Assembly: GCA_964247055.1 (NCBI GenBank)
Contig: OZ176055.1
Span: 4,092,001 to 4,156,000 of the forward strand
DNA from: Paragordius varius
Lineage: Eukaryota; Animalia; Nematomorpha
Reading direction: 5' to 3'
Length of the DNA stretch: 64,000 nt
The notes under the pieces are model-generated. The model did not search any database, was not told the DNA's origin, and saw only the letters and a program-made list of their open reading frames with translations. The translations under genes and the position numbers were made by a program. Within the stretch, counting starts at the first letter, position 1; every line of letters begins with the position of its first letter. Below, one piece after another: positions 47,498-57,034 of this stretch.

Positions 47498-50400
47498 ATG
47501 TTGAATTTAAAGTTTTTTACAATATTCTTATTCATTCTTATCGGATGTAAGTTTTTCATATTAAATAAAAGTGGATATTATCATACCCACATTTTTGCAG
47601 TCTTAAAATTATCCAAAATTTTAATGTGTCAATTTATCAAATGCCATTATTACCTTATATATCTGGAATGATAAACCATCATTGATAAACCATTTAGATC
47701 AGGGGTGTCCAACACGCCCTTTAAAATATTTATGCGACCCGCAAGATACCGAATACAAAATTTTATATATAAAAACTGGTGTTTACAAAATCTAAGGAAA
47801 AATTATGTTTATTAAACTAAGTTTTTAAATTTGAAAATAAAGTTGCTAACTTGTATATAAATTGTGTTCGTATATGTTTTTAGATTCTATTGTTTGAAAT
47901 TTAATAAAATATTCATTATATCTTTTTCGAATGCGGCTTACGAGGCCATTTGTGCTGGGCACCCCTGTTTAGATAAACAAAATTATGAAAGATATTATGA
48001 AAGACATCCTAACACTTCTGACCACATCACATTAATTTGGGCACTTAAAAAATATATTATTTTCAACCATTTTTTACTTCACTTAAGCGTATTGAATCAT
48101 ACATCATACGATAGCTAAAAGTTTCAAGATAATATTTGTCAATATGATATATACTAGGGGTGGCCAAATGTTCGACTTCGTGCCCGTGAGATTAAACGTG
48201 ACCGCCTGAAAAATTTATAAAAAATGTAAAAATATTTTTGCATAGAATTTTTTTCCATAAAATTTTAATTTATTTTTCATAATTTATTTTTGTTTTGAAA
48301 AAAATTTACCCGTTAACAAAAAATATTTAACTAATTTAATTAAGATAAATAGCCGCATATTTGGAAAATTTCTGCACTTTTCAACTCTTTTTTTGGATCC
48401 ACATTTGTATGAATGTTATTAAAACTAAACAGAGATCACGATTAACTGATAAATATTTCGAATCTTGCCTGAGAATTGCACTGATTTTATATAAACCCAA
48501 TTTTGAAAAACTTTCTAAATTATGGCATACTCAATCTCTTAAATATTTTTTTAAAGTAACATCAAGTTTTTCCACATTCAGCTCACATGACATCGGGATA
48601 ATTTAAAACCGAAATTCTAAATGTTAACGAACTCTGATTAGTTTTCATTACACATCCAAATCTAGCAAATTTGCTTTAAGAAAATGGTTAAGTATTTGAG
48701 TTTTACATTCAACAAATTATCAAACGGAGATAAAACATGGAAATGTATTCGAGTTTATGTATTGAGAAAAATTTTTTCTCCAATATCATCGACATTTTTT
48801 AAATCAACTTTTCAGATTACGTCAAATTAGAAAAATGTGACACTGTTTTTAATTGATTTACACCGTACAATTTTTCTGAGAATCTTTCGTCTACTTAGAT
48901 ATAGCTGTAATAAAAATTGTCTTAATCTGTATAAAAAAGCAGCAGGTCTTAACCATCTTTCATCTGTATTAACTAGTTAACTATGTCAACACCAATTCCT
49001 TTTAACCAAACCTAAAACTGCTGTGCGACCCTCTTTTCCAATTGACGAAAATCTTGAAGCATATGTCGATTATTTAAAACCTGGTGTGCGGTGATCCATA
49101 AAATCTGGTAAATTATAGATATCTTTACCAAGAGCTACAAATCCATTTTTTACTTCAATCATCCGAAATCCATCGCAAGATGTACAATTAAAAGTATCTA
49201 CTGTAAATTAAATCATTTGAATAAAATGTTTTAGTATTTGTACACTGATTGTGGCAACCAGAGGTCTTCTGAATCATTAATATTTTAACAAAAAGATTTT
49301 ATATAAAAATAACTACCAAATATATTTTTTACAATATTATTTCAAAATGGCCTGTGATAGTCACCCCAATCCGTAAATAGAGATATATATTTTGATAAAG
49401 TGATAAATGATTTTTTTTATTCTTAATATTTATACATGCCCGCCTGAAATTTTATGTCAAAAAGGTAGCCTGTGGGAAAAAAGGATAGCCACCCCTGATA
49501 TATACGGTTAAAATACTAGAAATAAAGTTATCTAAATTTTTTAGTTATTAGCCAAAATCAAAAAATCGCATTTTTATCCCATATTAGGTTAAATAAAATT
49601 CAACACAATAGATGAAAACGTGTCAACTAAATTTTATATGTTTTAATTTAATATAGCACAAGAATAATTCGCCAATTTTTTTTATAAAAGCAAATTTTTT
49701 GAAGTATATTGGATAATCTTTATAAGAGTTAATATATAATTGTTTTAATAAAAATTAAAATCTTTTACCGCATATTAACAATTTTTTATGATTTAAATTT
49801 GACGCCAAAGTGCGTTTTAATTTATAGTCTTGTAAATCTTTCTGGGACCCTCAGAAAAAATGTAAAGTCCTTGTTGATAATATTTTGCGCAAGGAATTAT
49901 CATAATTAAAATTTGGTTGACACGTTTTCATCTATTGTCTTTAATTTTATTTGGCCTAATATGCGATAAAAATGCGATTCTTTGATTTTGCCTAATCATA
50001 GAAAAATTAAAATAATTTTCTTAAGTATTTTAACCACATGTATCATTTCGAAATTTATTATCCTGGTACTTTAAGCTATCGATTGATTAATACAATGAAG
50101 GCACAAGCGAAACGCCTGCCCGTCTGATGTAGCAATTTGATTTTTTATAGTTGTCGAAACGATTATGCTAAAATAAATCTTGTGAACTCTTATAAATAAA
50201 CACATAAAATAATGGTAGATTCTAATTAAGGGTGTAACTTTTGTTTGCTTAAAGTTTCCAAATCATTATATAAGTAGATTATTTATGATGTCAACTTTTC
50301 AAGATGTCACAAATTGAATAGAGTTTAACGAAATTTGTATACATTTTGTTTAGTGAATGGATTAGATTTTCAACAAATACGTGGTAGAGCTGGAGGCTCA

Positions 50401-53154
50401 ACCCTTTATCGGAGAAACAATAACAACAGAAATAGGGGTAATAATAATAACAATAACCAAAATTTAAATCAAAAAAATGAATTAACCAAATATTTCCCCT
50501 ATATGGCTTCTCAATATACCATTCGATTGGCTTTTTATTCCCCATCTCTTGATGGAAATACAAACTCCAACAATCGAAGAAATATGTATAAGCGAATGGT
50601 TAAACAGGTAAACCCAAAAATAATTGTGAAATCTTAAAAATTTGCAATTCTATTATTAATAAATATTGTTTTCGTTTTTCTGAATATTTTAGTTGAATGT
50701 TCTGTTTGACCGTTACAATCGCACAGGATTTTTCATACAAGCTCATATAGTTGCCCTTTTTAACTATACAGTGAGTTTTCTGAATACTAAAATTTGATTT
50801 ATAAGAATATACCATTTGCACTTCTATTTGGTCCTTTAACATTTCAAGCTCATTGTTAAAAATACTGTTTGAGTAAAAAAATATATCTAAACAAAAATTT
50901 TTAACCGAAAAATTGATTAATAAATTCATCAACAAATTATAAACAAGATTTAATTATTTAAAGACCACTTGTAGTGCAAATAATATACATTCGCCATTTT
51001 ATTTTTTCATTTATGATTGGATGTTATATTCTTTGCCAATTTATGTTGCCTAATTTATAAAAATTAAAATATAGGCTCCTGTTCAAACAAATTTTCAACA
51101 ATTGTTTCGACAATTCGCAAGCGATCAGCGTCAAAACCGCATGAATTTTGATTATGATATTGGCATTTTAGAAATAAAGTAATAATTTATGGTTTATGAA
51201 AAACATTTATTTTAATTATAGGTAAATATAGTCTTCAATAAATTAACTTTTAAAAAAATATTACATTCATTTAAACTGAATTAAAATTTTGTTTTAAATA
51301 TTGCAAATTTTATTATATATATTTACAAATATATGATATAACTACACTAATTTTTATACATGTTTTTTAGTAATTCAACAAACATCCCATCTCAAAGTAT
51401 GTTAGATTCGATTACACAATATATTTGTCTATAAATTAGATTAAAATTAATATATTTTATTTAGATAATTTGGCATATGGTCAAATTTGTGATGCCCAGA
51501 ACAGCGCTATTATACTCCCTACCATTAGTAATGTAAAACAAGCTTCCCTCAGGATCTTCCGCGAAATAGCGAATCTGTAAGTCCTAATACCCTTTTCAAA
51601 AAATTAGCTTAGACGATTTAATTTCACAACATTTTTCTTAAAATTTTCAAAACCTTTCTGTATGGGTTTTAGTTTCGCAAGAAAAAACGTATTTACTACT
51701 TTTATACCGCACATAAATATAGATTTTTAAAGTTTTTTATTATTTATAAAAAATTAGTATTTTTAAGGACTCATAACTTTAAACACTCGTCTGCTTAGGG
51801 CTGACAGTGAGGTTGGATTGGGTAATTACGTAGTTTGAACCTCTCACACGCACTGAAATTTAGTCAGGCGCCCTAACCTTGGTACCATCGCGTTCATTTG
51901 CTTTATAAAAATATTCAAATCATTTCTTTGATAATAAATATGTTTTTTACTAAAAAAATTAAACTTTATGGCGTTTTTGATTTTTAGATTAAAAATCGAA
52001 ATCATGCAGATAAGTAAAAGCAGAAATAATTTTTGTTTAAAAAAAGACCGGCATACTTTTTTAAACTTTATTTTTTAAGTATAACATTGTTTTAAATAGC
52101 AAAGTGTGAATTAGAGATATAAATAGGTAACACAAGCAATTCTATATTTTACACTTGATATTAAATAATTTACAAGGTTTAAAAAAGTATGGTTGTGGGA
52201 AAAAATATTTGTCTTTATGTTTTTGCGTTTTGTCTGTATAATATCAATAGAGTCGGAGTTCGTGTCAGCAACACAGGCGGTAATGATGACAACGATTACG
52301 ACTATGATAATTATGACGATGGGAATGATTACAATGATAATCTAAATAATTATGATGATGATTACAATAATTACGACACTTTTAACATTCAATCTGCATC
52401 AGCTAGTAGAACTAGATTACCCTATCAAAGGCCGCCTAACGATACACCTAGTATTATCAATAACATATCCATTTTAATTTGCTATTTGAGAGATCAATAT
52501 ATTAAATTTTATTCATAAATAAATATACAGTTTAAGGTTTCATTTTTTTCTTTTATATTAAAAGGATAAGAAACTTAAATTGTATCACTCATGAAGGCTT
52601 TAAAACTAGCATGCCCAGTGCTAACAGTGATGATAGAATAATTGGATAGTTTTGGGATTCGAACTCTGGAACTCCACATAGAAACAGTGAAAGAGTCCGG
52701 CACCCCACCTACTATACCATCACGCCTTATAAATTTTACATTATATCCTTATATTTTAGCGAGGGAGCCAATCTACGACACTATAGGTCAACCCTTGGAA
52801 GAAGAATTGAGAGACGACAACACTGATTCATCAACCGTTTTATTATCGAGTACTATACCCAACCCAAGGAATGTGTATGCTGAATTCTTCCCCGGTTCCC
52901 TGACGGTTAAAACGAAAAGGGAAACCAATTCAAATCTTCGTAGACGTCCTAACACATCTGTTTTAAAAGTTAGGTCACGCGCCAATCGTAATAATCAAAA
53001 CAACAATAACCGAAATCGCAATAGAAATAGAAACAATAATAATAATAATCAGGGAAAGGGTTGTAACAATTCAGGCATACGTTTATCGAGTGGAGAAAAA
53101 AGAATGCTAGCGAAACTTAGGTCACAAACATATTAATCGTTGTTTAAAGTGTTT

Positions 53155-53192
<38 letters not shown>

Positions 53193-56100
53193 CATTAATG
53201 TTGGTAGATTAACATTATTGTTGGTCAATTGGTAATACAGTAGCATTTGAAATAAAACAAATATTCTTCATTAAATAAAATTCAATGCTGTAAGATAGGA
53301 AAAATTGTAATTTCAATCACTTTTTGTTTTACCCATACGTTGTATCAATTTGCCAAAAATAATGTGAATTGACCAACATTAATATTCATACTTATTTGAA
53401 TATTTTGAAATGATGGTTAGATCCCGACTGGGTTGGTGCCTCTTGTATGGTAATGAACATTGGTTGAACAATGAAAACGCAACAAAATACAATCCCTATG
53501 ATGAATTATGCATAATGAAATATGGAAGAGGTGCCCGTAGTGTAATTTCGGTAAATTTTACATATTATTATATTTATTTTTCTAAATATTCAGCGTTTTT
53601 ATATCAAATATTTTGAGATCAAATATTTATTAATAACTTTTATCCTATTTAAGCAATCCACATGTAAACAATTCGTATGCCGTTTAAAAAATGGGAAGAG
53701 AGGGAGCATTCAATTAAGAATGGATTATACACCTTGTAAGGGAAATAATGCTGGTACCCTTGAGGAAAACGCTAGCACTAATAATAATAATCTGGTAATT
53801 TATTATTAATTGAAATTTTATGGGTAACTTTTTGCATTATTGGTATTTTTTAAATATTGTTAATTTGAAATAAAACGATCCATGCTGGAGGTAGTTGCAA
53901 GAAACAATAGTGCTTAAGCTAGCAGAAAGTAGTTTCGAAAATGTATTTTATTTAATTTCATTTTATGCAAGGTATCAGATATCGAATATGCTCACTTTTT
54001 TGTATGGATAATTTGATAAGTTGGCCTATTTGTAGCTTTTTGAAAAAATCTTTTTTACTAAACCTCCTTTGTGCCATACCATTTATGGCATGAATGAAAA
54101 GGAAATCTATAATCCTTTAAATTTAGCCATCTAAAGCTGACGAGGGAATAGTAGCTCGAGTATTGATAAATAACTTTTTTAATGATGCATAAACACCTAT
54201 TTAAAAGCATCTTTTGATCATTATCTCATATTTCAAATATAGAAGATTTTATCAGAACGGTTGAGCTAGTATTACTTAAAAACAATAAATAATATTCATT
54301 TATAAAGCTAATTTTGCAAGCCCTGGAATCTACCTGATTATATTGCAATTAAGCTTTAAAACCTGCAAAAATTACTAACAAAAGGCATTCCGATTTTGCC
54401 ATTATGCCATATATATCTTTTAACGAAGTCATAAACGAAAAAAAATGTTTTAAAAGTGAAAATAAATTAAACATACACAAACTACAAATAACTGTTTTAA
54501 GTCCAATTATTATACGAGTTAAGTAATTTTCATAAATTATTGACAGAAAGTATGCCTTAATCAACGCTGTGTAACCGTTGGTACCAATGATGATAACAAT
54601 GGTGGTGGAGGAAATAACAATAATACTCAATGGACAACTTGTCGAGGATATTGTCCTTATCCCTTTCAATCTCGATCTTGCAAGTTTGTCTTTTTTTCTA
54701 ATTCTTAATTGCTATTCCAAATTAAAAATTTATATCTTAGAAGTACTCATTAGGTTACAATTAGGTGATCATTTTAGCAGGAGCTTCAATTTTAAAGATT
54801 TGTTCTCGAATTTATGGGCTAAAGGGATTGCAAATAGAGCATTTATAATTTGTCTCCTATTTTCAACATAAAATAATTTAAAGGCACAAGCATTTGTAAC
54901 GCTTACTTTTTTAAACCTATAACATTTTCGAGGATTCATTTTTTATGTTTTATGGATTTTTTCATAAATTTAGCGATGATGGAGGTGACAATTATGACAA
55001 CTATGATACCGGCGATGATTACGATTATGATTATAATAATGGAAACAACAATGACAATAACGCACAATGTGTAAATGGGCGCACATTCAGGATTTGCTCG
55101 AATACGGTAATCAATACATTTACATCATTATTTTATTTGCCATAGGTAGTTTTTTCAATAAATGGTAAAGACTTACATTGTATAAGGACTCGGAACCTTA
55201 AGTCGCCTGACCAGGGCTCACAGAGATAAAAAATATTTCACCAATTAAAAATAGTAAAATCACAATACTTCTTTTTTACTCATTCATATAATTGACTTAA
55301 AAATGTAACCCCTTTTTGTGGATTTGAAACTAGTAATATAATTTTACTATTTTTATAAAATTCTATTATGTTAAACTTGTTAAAATAATAAATGAAATTC
55401 ATGTTGGTTTGAATATAAAGAACCGCTTTTAAAGTAATCATTTGAAATTAAAAAACATATGACAATTTATGATTTGAAGATTATATATAGTTGTGGTTTA
55501 AAAATAACTCTTGAGTATAATTAAGTGTATTAAATTTAAATTTATTGACAGTATAAAAATAAAATAGAAGGCATGATGGTATAGTAGGTAAGGCACCAAA
55601 TTTTTAATGGGTACCAAACTAAAAACCGTGAAACTAAACAATTTTTTTATCTCTGTGAGCCCTGGGCAGAGGCGACTGTTTAAGTTTTCCCGAGTCCTGA
55701 TACAATAAAAGTCTTTACCCTTTAATGAAAAAGGGAAAAAGAGATCCTAAACTATACAGACACTATAAAAAGAAATTGATTATATTTGGTATTTTATGCT
55801 TACATTTTTGGTGGATATAACTACTGACTGCAATTATAAGTCAGTCAATATCATTATTTGAGTAATCGAATTCACCATTAATGCAGACATTTTTCCAGTT
55901 AAAAATATATATATAACTATACTATAAATATGTTTTATAATCTAGAATAGTAATTGTCAAACACAAAATGTAATGCGACAAGCCAATCAACGATTGTGCC
56001 GTGCCCAATATCTAAACTCTCAATTTGTTAACGGTATAAAACTAATATATATTATCTTATGATAAGTAAATTTTTTAAAAAAAATTTTAATATTCTCTCA

Positions 56101-56460
56101 CCCATATTGCTCAGTTTATTACCCCAATAATCCTTGTAAATTGAGATGTAATGTAAATGGTCAAATAAATTTGCTCCAACGCAATGTCCAAGATGGAACT
56201 TATTTCCGCTCAAATAATTCAAACAATAACAATGATTATAATAATGACTATTACGACAATTATGATTATGATAACGACGGTTCAGCTCAAACTTACATAT
56301 GTGTTAGGGGCCAAGTTTTTGTAATTTTTTTAATAATATCTTAAGAATTCTGAAACATATGTTTTATAGTTTTACAAAATCACTAAATGTTGTACATAGT
56401 AAATAGCATTTTGACTAATGGAAAAGCGAAAAATATTATTAAGAAAATAATATTACCTTT

Positions 56461-56506
<46 letters not shown>

Positions 56507-57034
56507 TATCTGGCAATAATTAATGAAAACTAGCAATGTATGCCAGAGGCGTAGCTAGCAATTCTGGCACCCGGTGCATGAATCCTATGATGGCGCCTTT
56601 CTCTCCCTCCATTCAATCCCTTGTATTTTAAAAAATAATCAAATTCAAACCGTACTCATAAATGGGTGATTATTTTTTAAAATAAAATTAAAATTTTTTT
56701 AATATCCCTGGCGCCCCTTCAACTATGGCGCAAAACATCCGTCGCCCTTCCCCCCTTAGCTACGCCTCTGATGTATTCTTACTCATACTGTATGTTTCCA
56801 TTTTGTCACAAATTTTACAGGAGTAATATGGTTAGTTTAAATTAACATGCATTATGAAATTTTTTTGCATTTTAGAGCGTTCAAGGTTCTCAAATGATTC
56901 CTGGAAACAACAATAATAATGGGGGCAATGGTGGAGGAGATTACTATCCCGATAATTATGATAATAATTATAATGATTATAATCTTTATAGGAGTGATTT
57001 GAACACTATAGAAAACTTGGCTGTCACGTTTTAA
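47498..57034 (+). CDS. Secreted ADAMTS-derived pseudoprotease (degenerate M12B domain, Cys-rich, TSP1-like, Cys-rich) with D/N/Y and R/N blocks, ~699 aa
   Basis: Fourteen exons in consistent phase, 2100 nt: 47498-47546, 50354-50607, 51075-51178, 51371-51396, 51465-51576, 52251-52450, 52760-53120, 53421-53550, 53654-53794, 54547-54683, 54974-55106, 55946-56033, 56115-56320, 56876-57034. Signal peptide MLNLKFFTIFLFILIGLNG. ADAMTS-like motifs DYDIGIL, GQICDAQNSAII, GWCLL, YDELC..KYG, CKQFVC..DYTPC, WTTCRGYC..QSRSC, PCKLRC..VQDGT..ICVRG. Confidence 0.7.
47700..47967. mobile_element. hAT-type MITE
   Basis: CAGGGGTGTCCAAC...CTGGGCACCCCTG, with TTTAGAT repeated on both flanks. Confidence 0.8.
48090..50095. 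mobile_element. Foldback/MITE with long inverted arms; its left arm is interrupted by the hAT element at 48155-49497
   Basis: 49506-49635 is inverted at ~49905-50035. The arm continues on the far side of the hAT: CGATAGCTAAAAGTTTCAAGATAATA (48109-48134) pairs with ~50055-50082. Confidence 0.7.
48155..49497 (-). mobile_element. Decayed Buster-type hAT transposon (1343 bp)
   Basis: TIRs TAGGGGTGGC/GCCACCCCTG and perfect 8-bp TSD ATATATAC. Minus-strand remnants CDG..KNGFVAL..PDF and NTDERWLR..FLYR; plus-strand C-terminal remnant MNVIKTKQRSRLTDKYFESCLRIA. Confidence 0.88.
51788..51892 (-). mobile_element. Possible tRNA-derived SINE remnant
   Basis: Minus strand GCGATGGTACCAAGGTTAGGGCGCCTGACT..TCAG..GAGGTTCAAAC has A-box and B-box-like segments but no complete cloverleaf. 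Confidence 0.45.
53194..53381. mobile_element. Small hairpin MITE; related sequence at ~59290-59395
   Basis: ATTAATGTTGGT..ACATTATT..TTGG..AATTG is inverted as CAATT..CCAAAAATAATGTG..ACCAACATTAAT. TGTAAGATAGG.AAAAATTG and CCAAAAATAATGTGAA recur in an intron of the neighbouring gene. Confidence 0.5.
55162..55721. mobile_element. Non-autonomous element with ~70-bp TIRs and TTAA-type target (Kolobok-like)
   Basis: GGTAAAGACTT..AGGACTCGG..AGTCGCCT..CAGGGCTCACAGAGATAAAAA is inverted at 55645-55720. Right junction CCCT|TTAA; left junction degenerate (ATAA|ATGG). Confidence 0.7.
56463..56505. repeat. (AT)n microsatellite, longest of several in the window
   Basis: Uninterrupted AT dinucleotide run of 43 nt. 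Shorter runs near 270, 23090, 29140 and 53165. Confidence 0.95.
56544..56770. mobile_element. hAT-type MITE (227 bp)
   Basis: Perfect 14-bp TIR CAGAGGCGTAGCTA/TAGCTACGCCTCTG; TSD ATGTATGC / ATGTATTC (7 of 8 match). Confidence 0.88.

What the first reader, a model, noticed from the sequence alone, without database searches (positions are those of the whole stretch)
47498..57034. ADAMTS-derived secreted pseudoprotease with all zinc ligands lost and loops filled with Asp-Asn-Tyr blocks
Seen: the spliced product has a signal peptide, no prodomain, then REIANLVGVRVS where metzincins have HExxHxxGxxH. Glu and Gly are kept, His becomes Arg/Asn/Val, and a phase-2 intron sits in the codon after the second His position. 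About 180 low-complexity residues follow, then ADAMTS-type Cys-rich, TSP1-like and Cys-rich segments. Four DNYD/YDYD-rich blocks (52270-52380, 54974-55050, 56215-56280, 56940-56985) and two R/N-rich blocks interrupt the domains. Established: the three His are required for zinc binding; as I recall, ADAMTS13 has a phase-2 intron at this motif position. Inference: an enzyme scaffold repurposed as a structural or adhesive matrix protein, with acidic Tyr suited to sulfation, cross-linking or Ca binding.
Basis: partly seen in the sequence, partly recalled or inferred. Interest (0 to 1): 0.75.

Follow-up and report, generated by a model that had tools for sequence, protein, structure and literature searches.

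The report
Dead-site ADAMTS-derived secreted protein gene
This hairworm-type genome holds an intact 15-exon gene for a secreted protein that descends from an ADAMTS matrix protease but has lost every zinc-binding residue, so it is most likely a non-enzymatic binding protein; dead enzymes of this sort are known among the related ADAMs, but the one review I read lists none among ADAMTSs.

Summary
Window 47498-57034 (+) carries a 15-exon gene, all GT-AG with consistent phases. It encodes a secreted protein with no prodomain.

Exon-by-exon profile comparison places six exons in order on the ADAMTS protease, disintegrin-like, TSP1 and Cys-rich (CA) modules. Fisher P over all ten exon tests is about 2e-6, and shuffle z is about 7 for the ancillary part.

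The protease part is weak by sequence (two exons, P about 0.02 each). But the gene shares seven intron positions and phases with in-genome short ADAMTS genes that keep HExxH. One is the phase-2 intron in the codon after the second His.

Here the site reads REIAN-L-VGVRV. There is no zinc ligand and no Met-turn. About 165 low-complexity residues replace the lower protease subdomain, and CB and spacer are missing. It is an ADAMTS-derived pseudoprotease.

This scan had already noted a second dead-site paralogue (RGIAY-S-MGVKY) on another contig; it shares His1-to-Arg.

The matrix, adhesive and sulfation ideas remain untested. Similar D/N/Y blocks occur elsewhere in the genome, and a TPST gene exists. 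The joined product was not searched or folded.

The parts
47498..47546 (+). Exon 1: start codon and signal peptide (16 codons + 1 nt), donor GTAAGT
   Evidence: hydrophobic core read directly, no predictor run
50354..50607 (+). Exon 2: N/R-rich block (about 50410-50480), then the presumed first strand and helix of the protease-like domain; no prodomain
   Evidence: the phase-0 donor matches the C2-array gene; hhalign of the exon's tail gave nothing
50693..50770 (+). Exon 3: 26 codons, phase 0 to 0; counterpart of a 27-codon exon of the C2-array ADAMTS gene
   Evidence: sequence similarity not significant
51075..51178 (+). Exon 4: protease-domain helix B and strand; phase 0 to 2
   Evidence: hhalign columns 184-217 of 926, P 0.018; same start and end phases as the C2-array exon
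51371..51396 (+). Exon 5: 26-nt micro-exon needed to keep the frame (acceptor after a T-run, donor GTATGT)
   Evidence: inferred, no RNA evidence
51465..51576 (+). Exon 6: GQIC...REIAN, the dead active-site helix; ends CT|GTAAGT (phase 2)
   Evidence: hhalign columns 239-268 with R on the first His, P 0.019; HMM 288-299; pairwise p 0.0056 against the C5 paralogue and p 0.0165 against L047
52251..52450 (+). Exon 7: (L)VGVRVS in place of xxGxxHD, then D/N/Y block 1 (52282-52383)
52760..53120 (+). Exon 8: low-complexity linker, R/N block (about 52985-53050), one Cys, and the last stretch of the protease domain; ends CTT AG|GT
   Evidence: the junction is identical in form to family exons L047, L049 and L050; no hit in 1.84 billion representative proteins
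53421..53550 (+). Exon 9: start of the disintegrin-like (D*) domain; begins ag|A TCC (split Arg, then S-x4-C-L-L)
   Evidence: hhalign columns 346-359, P 0.26
53654..53794 (+). Exon 10: D* core (STC..FVC...TPC), followed by an N-rich tail
   Evidence: hhalign columns 367-395, P 0.047; HMM 418-451; p 0.0005 against L049 and p 0.002 against the C5 paralogue
54547..54683 (+). Exon 11: end of D* (KVC..QRC), G/N insert, first three Cys of TSP1
   Evidence: hhalign columns 398-433, P 0.0024; HMM 452-487
54974..55106 (+). Exon 12: D/N/Y block 2 (54975-55061) in place of the TSP1 NPxPxxGG loop, then TSP1 Cys 4 and 5
   Evidence: the best hhalign hit was off-target, P 0.06, so the placement rests on Cys order and position
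55946..56033 (+). Exon 13: last TSP1 Cys and first Cys of the Cys-rich CA subdomain
   Evidence: no profile hit; placed by position only
56115..56314 (+). Exon 14: CA core (PCKLRC ... VQDGT), D/N/Y block 3 (56207-56284), ICVRGQ
   Evidence: hhalign columns 506-537, P 0.00025; best window-wide HMM hit, E 0.042; nearest Atlas clusters are Adt-1/ADAMTS_CR_3, a lead only
56876..57034 (+). Exon 15: Cys-free tail with D/N/Y block 4 (56936-56989) and the stop codon
   Evidence: the terminal exon is inferred from its acceptor and open frame

Best explanation
The locus is an intact gene for a secreted, catalytically dead descendant of an ADAMTS protease.

Shown:
- It has 15 GT-AG exons with consistent phases.
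- Six exons align in order to the ADAMTS protease (M), disintegrin-like (D*), TSP1 and Cys-rich CA modules.
- Its exon-intron plan matches in-genome ADAMTS genes that keep HExxH: the twelve-copy C2 array and a set of short ADAMTS-type loci.
- The motif HExxHxxGxxH reads R-E-I-A-N-L-V-G-V-R-V.
- No Met-turn can be found.
- The stretch between the active-site helix and the end of the M domain has grown from about 48 to about 186 residues of low-complexity sequence.
- CB, spacer and prodomain are absent.

Inferred:
- Without zinc ligands it cannot cleave anything.
- What remains are the D*, TSP1 and CA modules, which in ADAMTS13 act as substrate-binding exosites. The protein therefore most likely acts by binding. 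It could be a matrix-associated protein like the ADAMTS-like proteins, or a decoy or competitor for the substrates or partners of its many active paralogues.
- The D/N/Y blocks sit in loops. They are either tolerated simple-sequence growth or acidic Tyr-rich surfaces that could be sulfated. Nothing here decides between these.
For: Gene model: (2172 nt, every acceptor AG, every donor GT).

Window-wide HMM search: in a search of all 1919 six-frame segments of the window with an ADAMTS profile, only three hits had E < 20. The top two were exons 14 and 11, in the right order.

Exon hits collinear and abutting: HMM 288-299, 418-451, 452-487 and 564-594.

Shuffle tests:
- Ancillary chain 10.2 against 2.3 +/- 1.2, 0 of 1000 shuffles as high; z 7.1.
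- Protease-domain exons 3-6: z 4.0, 2 of 1000.

hhalign against 31 ADAMTS proteins (926 columns):
- Exon 4: columns 184-217, P 0.018.
- Exon 6: 239-268, P 0.019, with R on His1.
- Exon 9: 346-359, P 0.26.
- Exon 10: 367-395, P 0.047.
- Exon 11: 398-433, P 0.0024.
- Exon 14: 506-537, P 0.00025.
- Fisher over all ten exon tests: 2.3e-6.

Shared introns and phases with in-genome ADAMTS genes:
- Phases 0, 0, 2, 2, 2, 0, 0. Each junction was compared with only some of those genes: the first three with the C2 array only, the last three with short-family loci.
- One is the Leu codon split after the second His position.
- One is the Arg codon split AG|A before S-x4-C-L.

Second dead-site paralogue at C5:10.73 Mb: it shares His1-to-Arg and Gly-to-Ala in the motif and the same introns. 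The exon-pair score sum has z 5.2, 0 of 5000.

No HExxH in any + frame of the locus.

Long open exons (119, 84, 66 and 66 codons) in 27% GC DNA argue for a gene that is, or recently was, under coding constraint.
Against: - Pfam found nothing exon by exon.
- Genome-wide six-frame Pfam searches for Reprolysin, ADAMTS_CR_2 and TSP_1 gave no hit in this locus at E <= 10.
- phmmer against PDB sequences gave no ADAMTS hit.
- The protease part is weak by sequence alone: p 0.11 in one chain test, not significant when the whole profile is allowed, and exons 2 and 3 gave nothing.
- Exon 12's best hit was off-target and exon 13 had none.
- Exon HMMs built from in-genome family members rank exons 6 and 10 only second of 1919, at E 3 and 0.27.
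- The Cys count is odd (19).
- There is no RNA, no orthologue and no dN/dS, so expression and selection are unproven.
- The spliced product was never searched or folded as a whole.
Confidence: 0.78

Rival explanations
1. It is a decaying or unexpressed relic. A duplicate of a short ADAMTS gene lost its active site and is drifting, filling with simple sequence. The frame is still open only because the loss of constraint is recent.
For: - Catalytic residues, the Met-turn, most protease-domain Cys, CB and spacer are all lost.
- The Cys count is odd.
- About 19% of residues are Asn.
- The low-complexity blocks show weak tandem structure.
- A 26-nt micro-exon is needed to keep the frame.
- No transcript evidence exists.
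Against: - About 723 codons stay open across 15 exons with canonical splice sites, in DNA where, by my estimate from the base composition, a random frame meets a stop about every 12 codons.
- All six TSP1 Cys and six D* Cys are kept. The two D* Cys that are missing are also missing in the active family members I inspected.
- A very divergent paralogue with the same His1-to-Arg change is also intact. This suggests the dead state is old and has been retained.
Confidence: 0.13
2. The N-terminal third is not protease-derived. On this view the gene is an ADAMTS-like ancillary-domain protein with an unrelated N-terminal region, and REIANLVGVRV resembles the zinc motif by chance.
For: Sequence support for exons 2-7 is marginal. 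Pfam Reprolysin gave no hit.
Against: - Two exons hit the expected profile columns in the right order and register.
- Five consecutive intron positions and phases in this region match in-genome ADAMTS genes with intact HExxH.
- The D* domain, which is present here, is absent from all ADAMTS-like proteins (PMC4885070).
- The C5 paralogue bridges the gap: it has the same dead helix but keeps the Met-turn and WSxCS segment.
Confidence: 0.05
3. The D/N/Y and R/N blocks have no function of their own. They are replication-slippage growth of GAT/AAT/TAT-type codons tolerated in surface loops of an AT-rich genome.
For: - D, N and Y codons differ only in the first base.
- TRF finds short-period repeats (periods 6-21, 77-91% matches) inside the blocks.
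- Similar D/N/Y runs occur at other loci: C1:3297385, C1:3317530, C2:7835027 and C2:8486723.
- The 33-base pattern is no commoner than its reversed control genome-wide.
Against: - Four such blocks lie in one gene, and none elsewhere in the other 146 kb sampled.
- Both T- and C-ending synonymous codons are used, so the blocks are not fresh microsatellites.
- Tyr flanked by Asp fits the tyrosine-sulfation consensus (from my own knowledge), and the genome has a TPST homologue.
Confidence: 0.5

Closest known systems
ADAMTS proteases (MEROPS M12B; core M-D*-T1-CA/CB-S)
   Same: - Signal peptide.
- Order of modules: M remnant, D*, central TSP1, CA.
- Conserved Cys framework of D* and TSP1.
- The CKL.C ... 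V.DGT core of CA.
- Exon-intron plan shared with in-genome ADAMTS genes.
   Different: - No prodomain.
- HExxHxxGxxH replaced by REIANLVGVRV.
- No Met-turn.
- Lower M subdomain replaced by low-complexity sequence.
- Second half of CA, CB and spacer missing.
- D/N/Y inserts.
ADAMTS-like proteins and papilin
   Same: Secreted and non-catalytic, built from ADAMTS ancillary modules. They are thought to act in the matrix by binding (PMC4885070).
   Different: ADAMTS-like proteins lack both the M and D* domains and keep CB and spacer (PMC4885070). This protein keeps an M remnant and D*, and lacks CB and spacer.
ADAM pseudopeptidases (ADAM2, 7, 11, 18, 22, 23, 29, 32; C. elegans unc-71)
   Same: M12B members whose zinc ligands and/or catalytic Glu are replaced while the domain is kept. 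They act through protein-protein contacts (PMC11266112, Table 2).
   Different: - They are membrane-anchored ADAMs with disintegrin, Cys-rich and EGF modules, and they typically keep the Met-turn (PMC11266112).
- This one is a soluble ADAMTS-type protein without a recognisable Met-turn.
- That review lists no ADAMTS pseudopeptidase.
Dead-site ADAMTS-like gene of the same genome at C5:10.73 Mb (earlier scan note s1-277291)
   Same: - His1-to-Arg and Gly-to-Ala in the motif (R.IA...GV).
- Phase-2 intron in the next codon.
- Phase-0 introns flanking the D* core exon.
- D* Cys 3 and 6 missing.
- Exon-pair similarity z 5.2.
   Different: - The C5 gene keeps the Met-turn and WSxCS segment (HMM 320-366, E 0.0099).
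- It has no D/N/Y block in the 18 kb scanned.
- It has Gly instead of Glu at the catalytic position.
- The two genes are otherwise very divergent.

Membership tests
ADAMTS (M12B) protease | N-terminal signal peptide | tested here: met
   Exon 1 has a short polar start followed by an 11-residue hydrophobic core. This was read directly; no predictor was run.
ADAMTS (M12B) protease | Prodomain of about 200 residues | tested here: not met
   Only about 45 N/R-rich residues lie between the signal peptide and the first protease-like strand. No profile hit falls in intron 1. An earlier scan note reports the in-genome C2-array genes as prodomain-less too; I did not test that.
ADAMTS (M12B) protease | Adamalysin-type metalloprotease domain (homology) | tested here: met
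   - Exons 4 and 6 hit profile columns 184-217 and 239-268, each at P about 0.02, in order and in register.
- Exons 3-6 chain z 4.0.
- Five intron positions and phases are shared with intact in-genome genes.
The sequence evidence is weak on its own.
ADAMTS (M12B) protease | Zinc site HExxHxxGxxH(D) | tested here: not met
   The site reads R-E-I-A-N-L-V-G-V-R-V-S across the exon 6/7 junction. No HExxH occurs in any + frame between 44 and 60 kb.
ADAMTS (M12B) protease | Met-turn below the zinc site | tested here: not met
   Exon 7 has no Met. The only Met of exon 8 lies in the terminal segment. The corresponding family exon (HMM 319-367) has no detectable counterpart apart from its last residues.
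ADAMTS (M12B) protease | Disintegrin-like (D*, ADAM_CR fold) domain directly after M | tested here: met
   - hhalign: exon 9 columns 346-359, exon 10 columns 367-395 (P 0.047), exon 11 columns 398-433 (P 0.0024).
- Exon 10 against L049: p 0.0005.
- Ancillary chain z about 7.
- Pfam ADAMTS_CR_2 itself gave no hit on single exons.
ADAMTS (M12B) protease | Central thrombospondin type-1 repeat | tested here: inconclusive
   Six Cys are in the canonical order, and the first third aligns. But only one Trp is kept, Pfam TSP_1 gave no hit, and exon 12's best hit was off-target.
ADAMTS (M12B) protease | Cys-rich domain (CA + CB) and spacer | tested here: not met
   Only the first half of CA is present (exon 14, P 0.00025). 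No profile hit to CB or spacer appears anywhere on the + strand of the window.
ADAMTS-like / papilin | Ancillary domains only: no M and no D* domain; CB and spacer present (PMC4885070) | tested here: not met
   An M remnant and D* are present; CB and spacer are absent.
Hairworm in-genome ADAMTS expansion (C2 array and short ADAMTS-type loci) | Shared exon-intron plan: phase-2 intron 2 nt after HExxH, Arg codon split AG|A before S-x4-C-L, phase-0 introns around the D* core exon, and D* Cys 3 and 6 absent | tested here: met
   - 17 of 19 active-site exons inspected end 2 nt after HExxH followed by GT.
- The junctions are identical in form in this gene.
- Nearest members by score lie on the same chromosome at C6:3.30-3.39 Mb.
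ADAM pseudopeptidases | ADAM architecture (disintegrin, Cys-rich, EGF, transmembrane segment) with the Met-turn kept | tested here: not met
   No transmembrane or EGF exon is seen in the model. The ancillary modules are of ADAMTS type. The Met-turn is not found.

The most novel reading that the evidence does not exclude
Hairworms may have turned members of their expanded, prodomain-less short ADAMTS family into a small, old lineage of non-catalytic secreted proteins. Two very divergent paralogues share the His1-to-Arg change. In this one the whole lower protease subdomain has been swapped for a long disordered region, and acidic Tyr-rich blocks are grafted into the TSP1 and CA loops. It would then work as a heavily sulfated, cation-binding adhesive or decoy protein of the worm's matrix or secretions.
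Probability: 0.2. Interest if true: 0.6.

Novelty: new variant of a known kind. Interest (0 to 1): 0.45.

Why it matters
Dead enzymes are well described for the membrane ADAMs. The 2024 review of metallopeptidase pseudoenzymes that I read (PMC11266112) lists none for the secreted ADAMTS branch, where the known non-catalytic relatives (ADAMTS-like proteins) have lost the protease and D* domains outright.

A gene that keeps a hollowed-out protease remnant plus D*, next to dozens of active paralogues with the same exon plan, offers two things. It is a natural series for asking which parts of an ADAMTS are needed for binding as opposed to cutting. It also adds to the picture of an unusual ADAMTS expansion in a little-studied parasitic phylum.

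It does not open a long-standing question, and nothing yet shows what the protein does.

Tried and rejected
Searches and tests that gave nothing, or little:
- Pfam on ten single exons: no relevant hit.
- Six-frame Pfam Reprolysin, ADAMTS_CR_2 and TSP_1 over the whole genome: none in this locus.
- Own-genome protein searches with exons 14 and 6: no close paralogue.
- phmmer of exons 14 and 10 against PDB sequences: only a spurious designed-repeat hit.
- phmmer of exon 8 against 1.84 billion representatives: zero hits, so no public protein model or orthologue could be fetched.
- Exact look-up of three neighbouring ORFs: not in the collection.
- tblastn of the exons against other ADAMTS loci: noise only.
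- Pairwise exon alignment with the C2-array gene: not significant.
- Exon HMMs built from in-genome family members: exons 6 and 10 rank second of 1919 but with E 3 and 0.27.
- Atlas look-up of exon 6: no usable hit.
- Own-genome search with D/N/Y block 1: found only itself, so it says nothing about how common such blocks are.

Ideas considered and rejected:
- A hidden exon with an intact HExxH.
- An ADAMTS-like protein identity, because D* is present.
- tRNA-derived elements in the introns: ARAGORN found none.

Not verified:
- The disulfide pairing of the M domain. I recall 1-5, 2-3, 4-8 and 6-7, which would make the kept pair GQIC/GWC a true pair. I could not find this in the papers I read, so it is only a lead.


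Full report
CONTEXT. The window is G000:C6:4092001-4156000 of a 110.6-Mb, 44-contig assembly with about 27% GC. Earlier notes of this scan call it a hairworm-type (Nematomorpha) genome. I did not test that. It is not human DNA. None of its proteins that I looked up are in the public protein collections.

GENE MODEL. I read the + strand from 47.3 to 57.3 kb and built a 15-exon model.
- Every acceptor is AG, every donor is GT, and all phases fit. The total is 2172 nt, that is 723 codons plus a stop.
- Exon 1 (47498-47546) is a classic signal peptide.
- One 26-nt micro-exon (51371-51396) is needed to link exons 4 and 6.
- The only alternative is a weak GTCAAA donor at 51130 joined to 51465. It removes a strand that aligns to the ADAMTS profile and gives up a donor whose position and phase are conserved. 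I prefer the 723-codon model.
- No HExxH exists in any + frame between 44 and 60 kb.

ROUTINE SEARCHES FAILED. Pfam on single exons, genome-wide six-frame Pfam searches, phmmer against PDB sequences and phmmer of exon 8 against 1.84 billion representatives gave nothing for this locus. By the scan's rule the spliced product was searched exon by exon only. The joined protein was never submitted to Pfam, to a structure predictor or to any other tool. That is the main gap of this report.

PROFILE EVIDENCE. I fetched 134 ADAMTS-family proteins and built a 986-state profile from 56 of them.
- Against all 1919 six-frame segments of the window, only three hits had E < 20. The top two were exon 14 (states 563-593, E 0.042) and exon 11 (452-487), in gene order.
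- With thresholds off, exons 6, 10, 11 and 14 map to states 288-299, 418-451, 452-487 and 564-594. Exons 10 and 11 abut exactly.
- A collinear-chain statistic for the ancillary exons is 10.2, against 2.3 +/- 1.2 in 1000 composition-preserving shuffles. A second scheme gives z 7.1.
- For the protease exons the same tests are weak: p 0.11, z 2.5, z 4.0 for exons 3-6 within the protease region, and no significance when the whole profile is allowed.
- hhalign against an alignment of 31 ADAMTS proteins (926 columns) gave these results:
  - exon 4 (paired with its C5 counterpart): columns 184-217, P 0.018;
  - exon 6 (likewise paired): columns 239-268, P 0.019, with Arg on the first His and Glu on Glu;
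  - exon 9: columns 346-359, P 0.26;
  - exon 10: columns 367-395, P 0.047;
  - exon 11: columns 398-433, P 0.0024;
  - exon 14: columns 506-537, P 0.00025.
- Exon 12's best hit was off-target (P 0.06). Exons 13, 3 and the tail of exon 2 gave nothing.
- Fisher's method over all ten tests gives 2.3e-6. The six on-target hits are strictly collinear, which has a chance of 1 in 720.
- The Atlas look-up of exon 14 pointed to Adt-1/ADAMTS_CR_3 clusters at scores of 0.80 and 0.77. That is a lead only.

GENE-STRUCTURE EVIDENCE. This is the strongest support for the protease part.
- The genome holds at least 30 ADAMTS-type active-site exons.
- In 17 of the 19 I inspected, the exon ends two bases after HExxH and is followed by GT. 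That is a phase-2 intron in the next codon, exactly as here. All 19 keep the His-Glu-x-x-His core.
- A copy of the twelve-gene C2 array also shares the following with this gene:
  - the phase-0 introns on both sides of a 27-codon exon (26 codons here);
  - the phase-0 start and phase-2 end of the next exon (AA|GT in both);
  - a phase-0 intron before the D* core;
  - a phase-2 intron just after the third TSP1 Cys.
- Short-family members on C6, C5, C4 and C3 share three further junctions:
  - a phase-2 junction in which an Arg codon is split AG|A and followed by Ser, four residues, Cys and Leu. This gene has CTT AG|GT ... ag|A TCC and R-S-R-L-G-W-C-L-L;
  - a phase-0 start of the D* core exon (K-S-T-C-I-K-L-V-C in L050, Q-S-T-C-K-Q-F-V-C here);
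  - a phase-0 junction before the last two D* Cys.
- Seven shared junctions with phases 0, 0, 2, 2, 2, 0, 0 have a chance of about 6e-4 on phase alone. That is before counting the similar exon lengths. Each junction was compared with only some of these genes, not all.
- The nearest members by pairwise score are L049 (exon 10, p 0.0005) and L047 (exon 6, p 0.0165). Both lie on the same chromosome, 0.75-0.85 Mb upstream.

A SECOND DEAD-SITE PARALOGUE. An earlier scan note mentioned a gene with RGIAYSMGVKY.
- I found it at C5:10736765-10736783 (-) with a degenerate pattern that included the expected donor. The contiguous pattern gave nothing.
- It reads R-G-I-A-Y + TC|GT ... ag|A + M-G-V-K-Y-D. 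This is the same phase-2 intron.
- It keeps the Met-turn and WSxCS segment (states 320-366, E 0.0099).
- Its exon pairs with this gene score p 0.0056 (active-site exon), p 0.002 (D* core), and z 5.2 in sum, 0 of 5000.
- Both genes have Arg for His1 and Ala for the motif Gly. They differ at His2, His3 and Glu.
- The simplest reading is that inactivation began before the two genes diverged, and that both have stayed open since. That argues for retained function, but it is an inference.

ANATOMY.
- Kept:
  - the signal peptide;
  - the upper-subdomain strands and helices of M, by position;
  - the Cys of GQIC and of GWCLL;
  - six of eight D* Cys (the two missing are also missing in the active family members inspected);
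  - all six TSP1 Cys;
  - four CA Cys and the V-x-D-G-T core.
- Lost:
  - the prodomain;
  - the three zinc-binding His;
  - the Asp after His3;
  - the Met-turn;
  - six of eight M-domain Cys;
  - two of the three TSP1 Trp;
  - the second half of CA, plus CB and the spacer.
- The family exon for states 319-367 (about 48 residues) is represented here by exons 7 and 8 (186 residues, with an extra phase-1 intron). Only its ends are recognisable.
- The protein has 19% Asn and two His in all.

THE D/N/Y BLOCKS.
- They are real, and they are the only such blocks in 156 kb of sampled DNA from this genome.
- A 33-base D/N/Y-codon pattern finds similar Asp/Tyr-rich runs at C1:3297385, C1:3317530, C2:7835027 and C2:8486723. 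The last two lie in other open frames.
- Inside the blocks TRF sees periods of 6-21 bases at 77-91% matches. Both T- and C-ending codons are used.
- The genome has a protein-tyrosine sulfotransferase homologue. Its best PDB matches are TPST1 and TPST2, E 9e-23.
- Sulfation of Asp-flanked Tyr is therefore feasible. Nothing shows that it happens, and neutral slippage in loops explains the blocks equally well.

MECHANISM.
- Shown: the protein cannot hold the catalytic zinc in the metzincin manner.
- Inferred: it acts by binding through D*, TSP1 and CA. These modules are exosites in ADAMTS13, and D* forms a unit with M (PMC4885070). It could be a matrix-associated protein, or a competitor of its active paralogues.
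- I put about 0.78 on 'intact ADAMTS-derived non-catalytic secreted protein', about 0.13 on 'relic in decay', about 0.05 on 'the N-terminal part is not protease-derived', and less on a mis-modelled active gene.

COMPARISON AND NOVELTY.
- It fails membership as an ADAMTS protease (no zinc site, Met-turn, CB or spacer).
- It fails as an ADAMTS-like protein, which lacks M and D* (PMC4885070).
- It fails as an ADAM pseudopeptidase, which has a different architecture and keeps the Met-turn (PMC11266112).
- By gene structure it is a member of the in-genome ADAMTS expansion.
- The review of metallopeptidase pseudoenzymes lists only ADAMs in M12. A dead ADAMTS that keeps M and D* remnants is therefore a new variant of a known kind.
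- This scan had already noted one such gene on another contig of the same genome.

LIMITS.
- There is no RNA, no orthologue, no test of selection and no whole-protein search or fold.
- Earlier notes say this genome has obligatory 21-24-nt introns. If some lie inside my exons, a few residues would change.
- The M-domain disulfide pairing and the sulfation consensus are from my own knowledge and were not checked here.

Noticed in passing
G000:C6:3305493-3873278 (loci L047-L050): At least five ADAMTS-type active-site exons with intact HExxH lie 0.27-0.85 Mb upstream of this gene on the same chromosome. Two of them (L047, L049) are its nearest relatives by pairwise score. This may be a dispersed gene cluster that includes the dead copy.
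   Followed up: partly
G000:C10:967248-974212 (loci L026, L027): A multi-exon gene matches Pfam Sulfotransfer_3 over its full length. Its first exon matches human TPST1 and TPST2 structures at E 9e-23. This is a protein-tyrosine sulfotransferase homologue.
   Followed up: partly
G000:C1:3297385-3297435 and C1:3317530-3317565; C2:7835027-7835059 (L024); C2:8486723-8486755 (L025): Other Asp/Asn/Tyr-codon runs resembling the blocks of this gene. The two on C1 are near-identical and 20 kb apart. The one in L024 sits in an 85-codon open frame of an unidentified S/N/K-rich gene.
   Followed up: partly
G000:C1:7204097-7204210 (L056): An active-site exon that reads HELTH (motif Gly replaced by Thr). 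The Pfam Reprolysin match to this locus contained two TAG stops. It may be another degenerating family member.
   Followed up: no
window 49521-50022 and 55151-55732: Long inverted repeats inside introns 1 and 12. The first has 128-nt arms, 84% complementary. The second has 43-nt and 27-nt arms about 500 nt apart. They look like MITE-type insertions.
   Followed up: no
window 53155-53189 and 56463-56505: Pure (TA)n microsatellites of 17 and 21 units in introns 8 and 14.
   Followed up: no
c5 paralogue, G000:C5:10737509-10737763 (L022:2509-2763, minus strand): Two exon-like open frames of the C5 dead-site gene are in the same frame and separated by a single stop codon. This would fit one of the tiny introns reported for this genome.
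   Followed up: no
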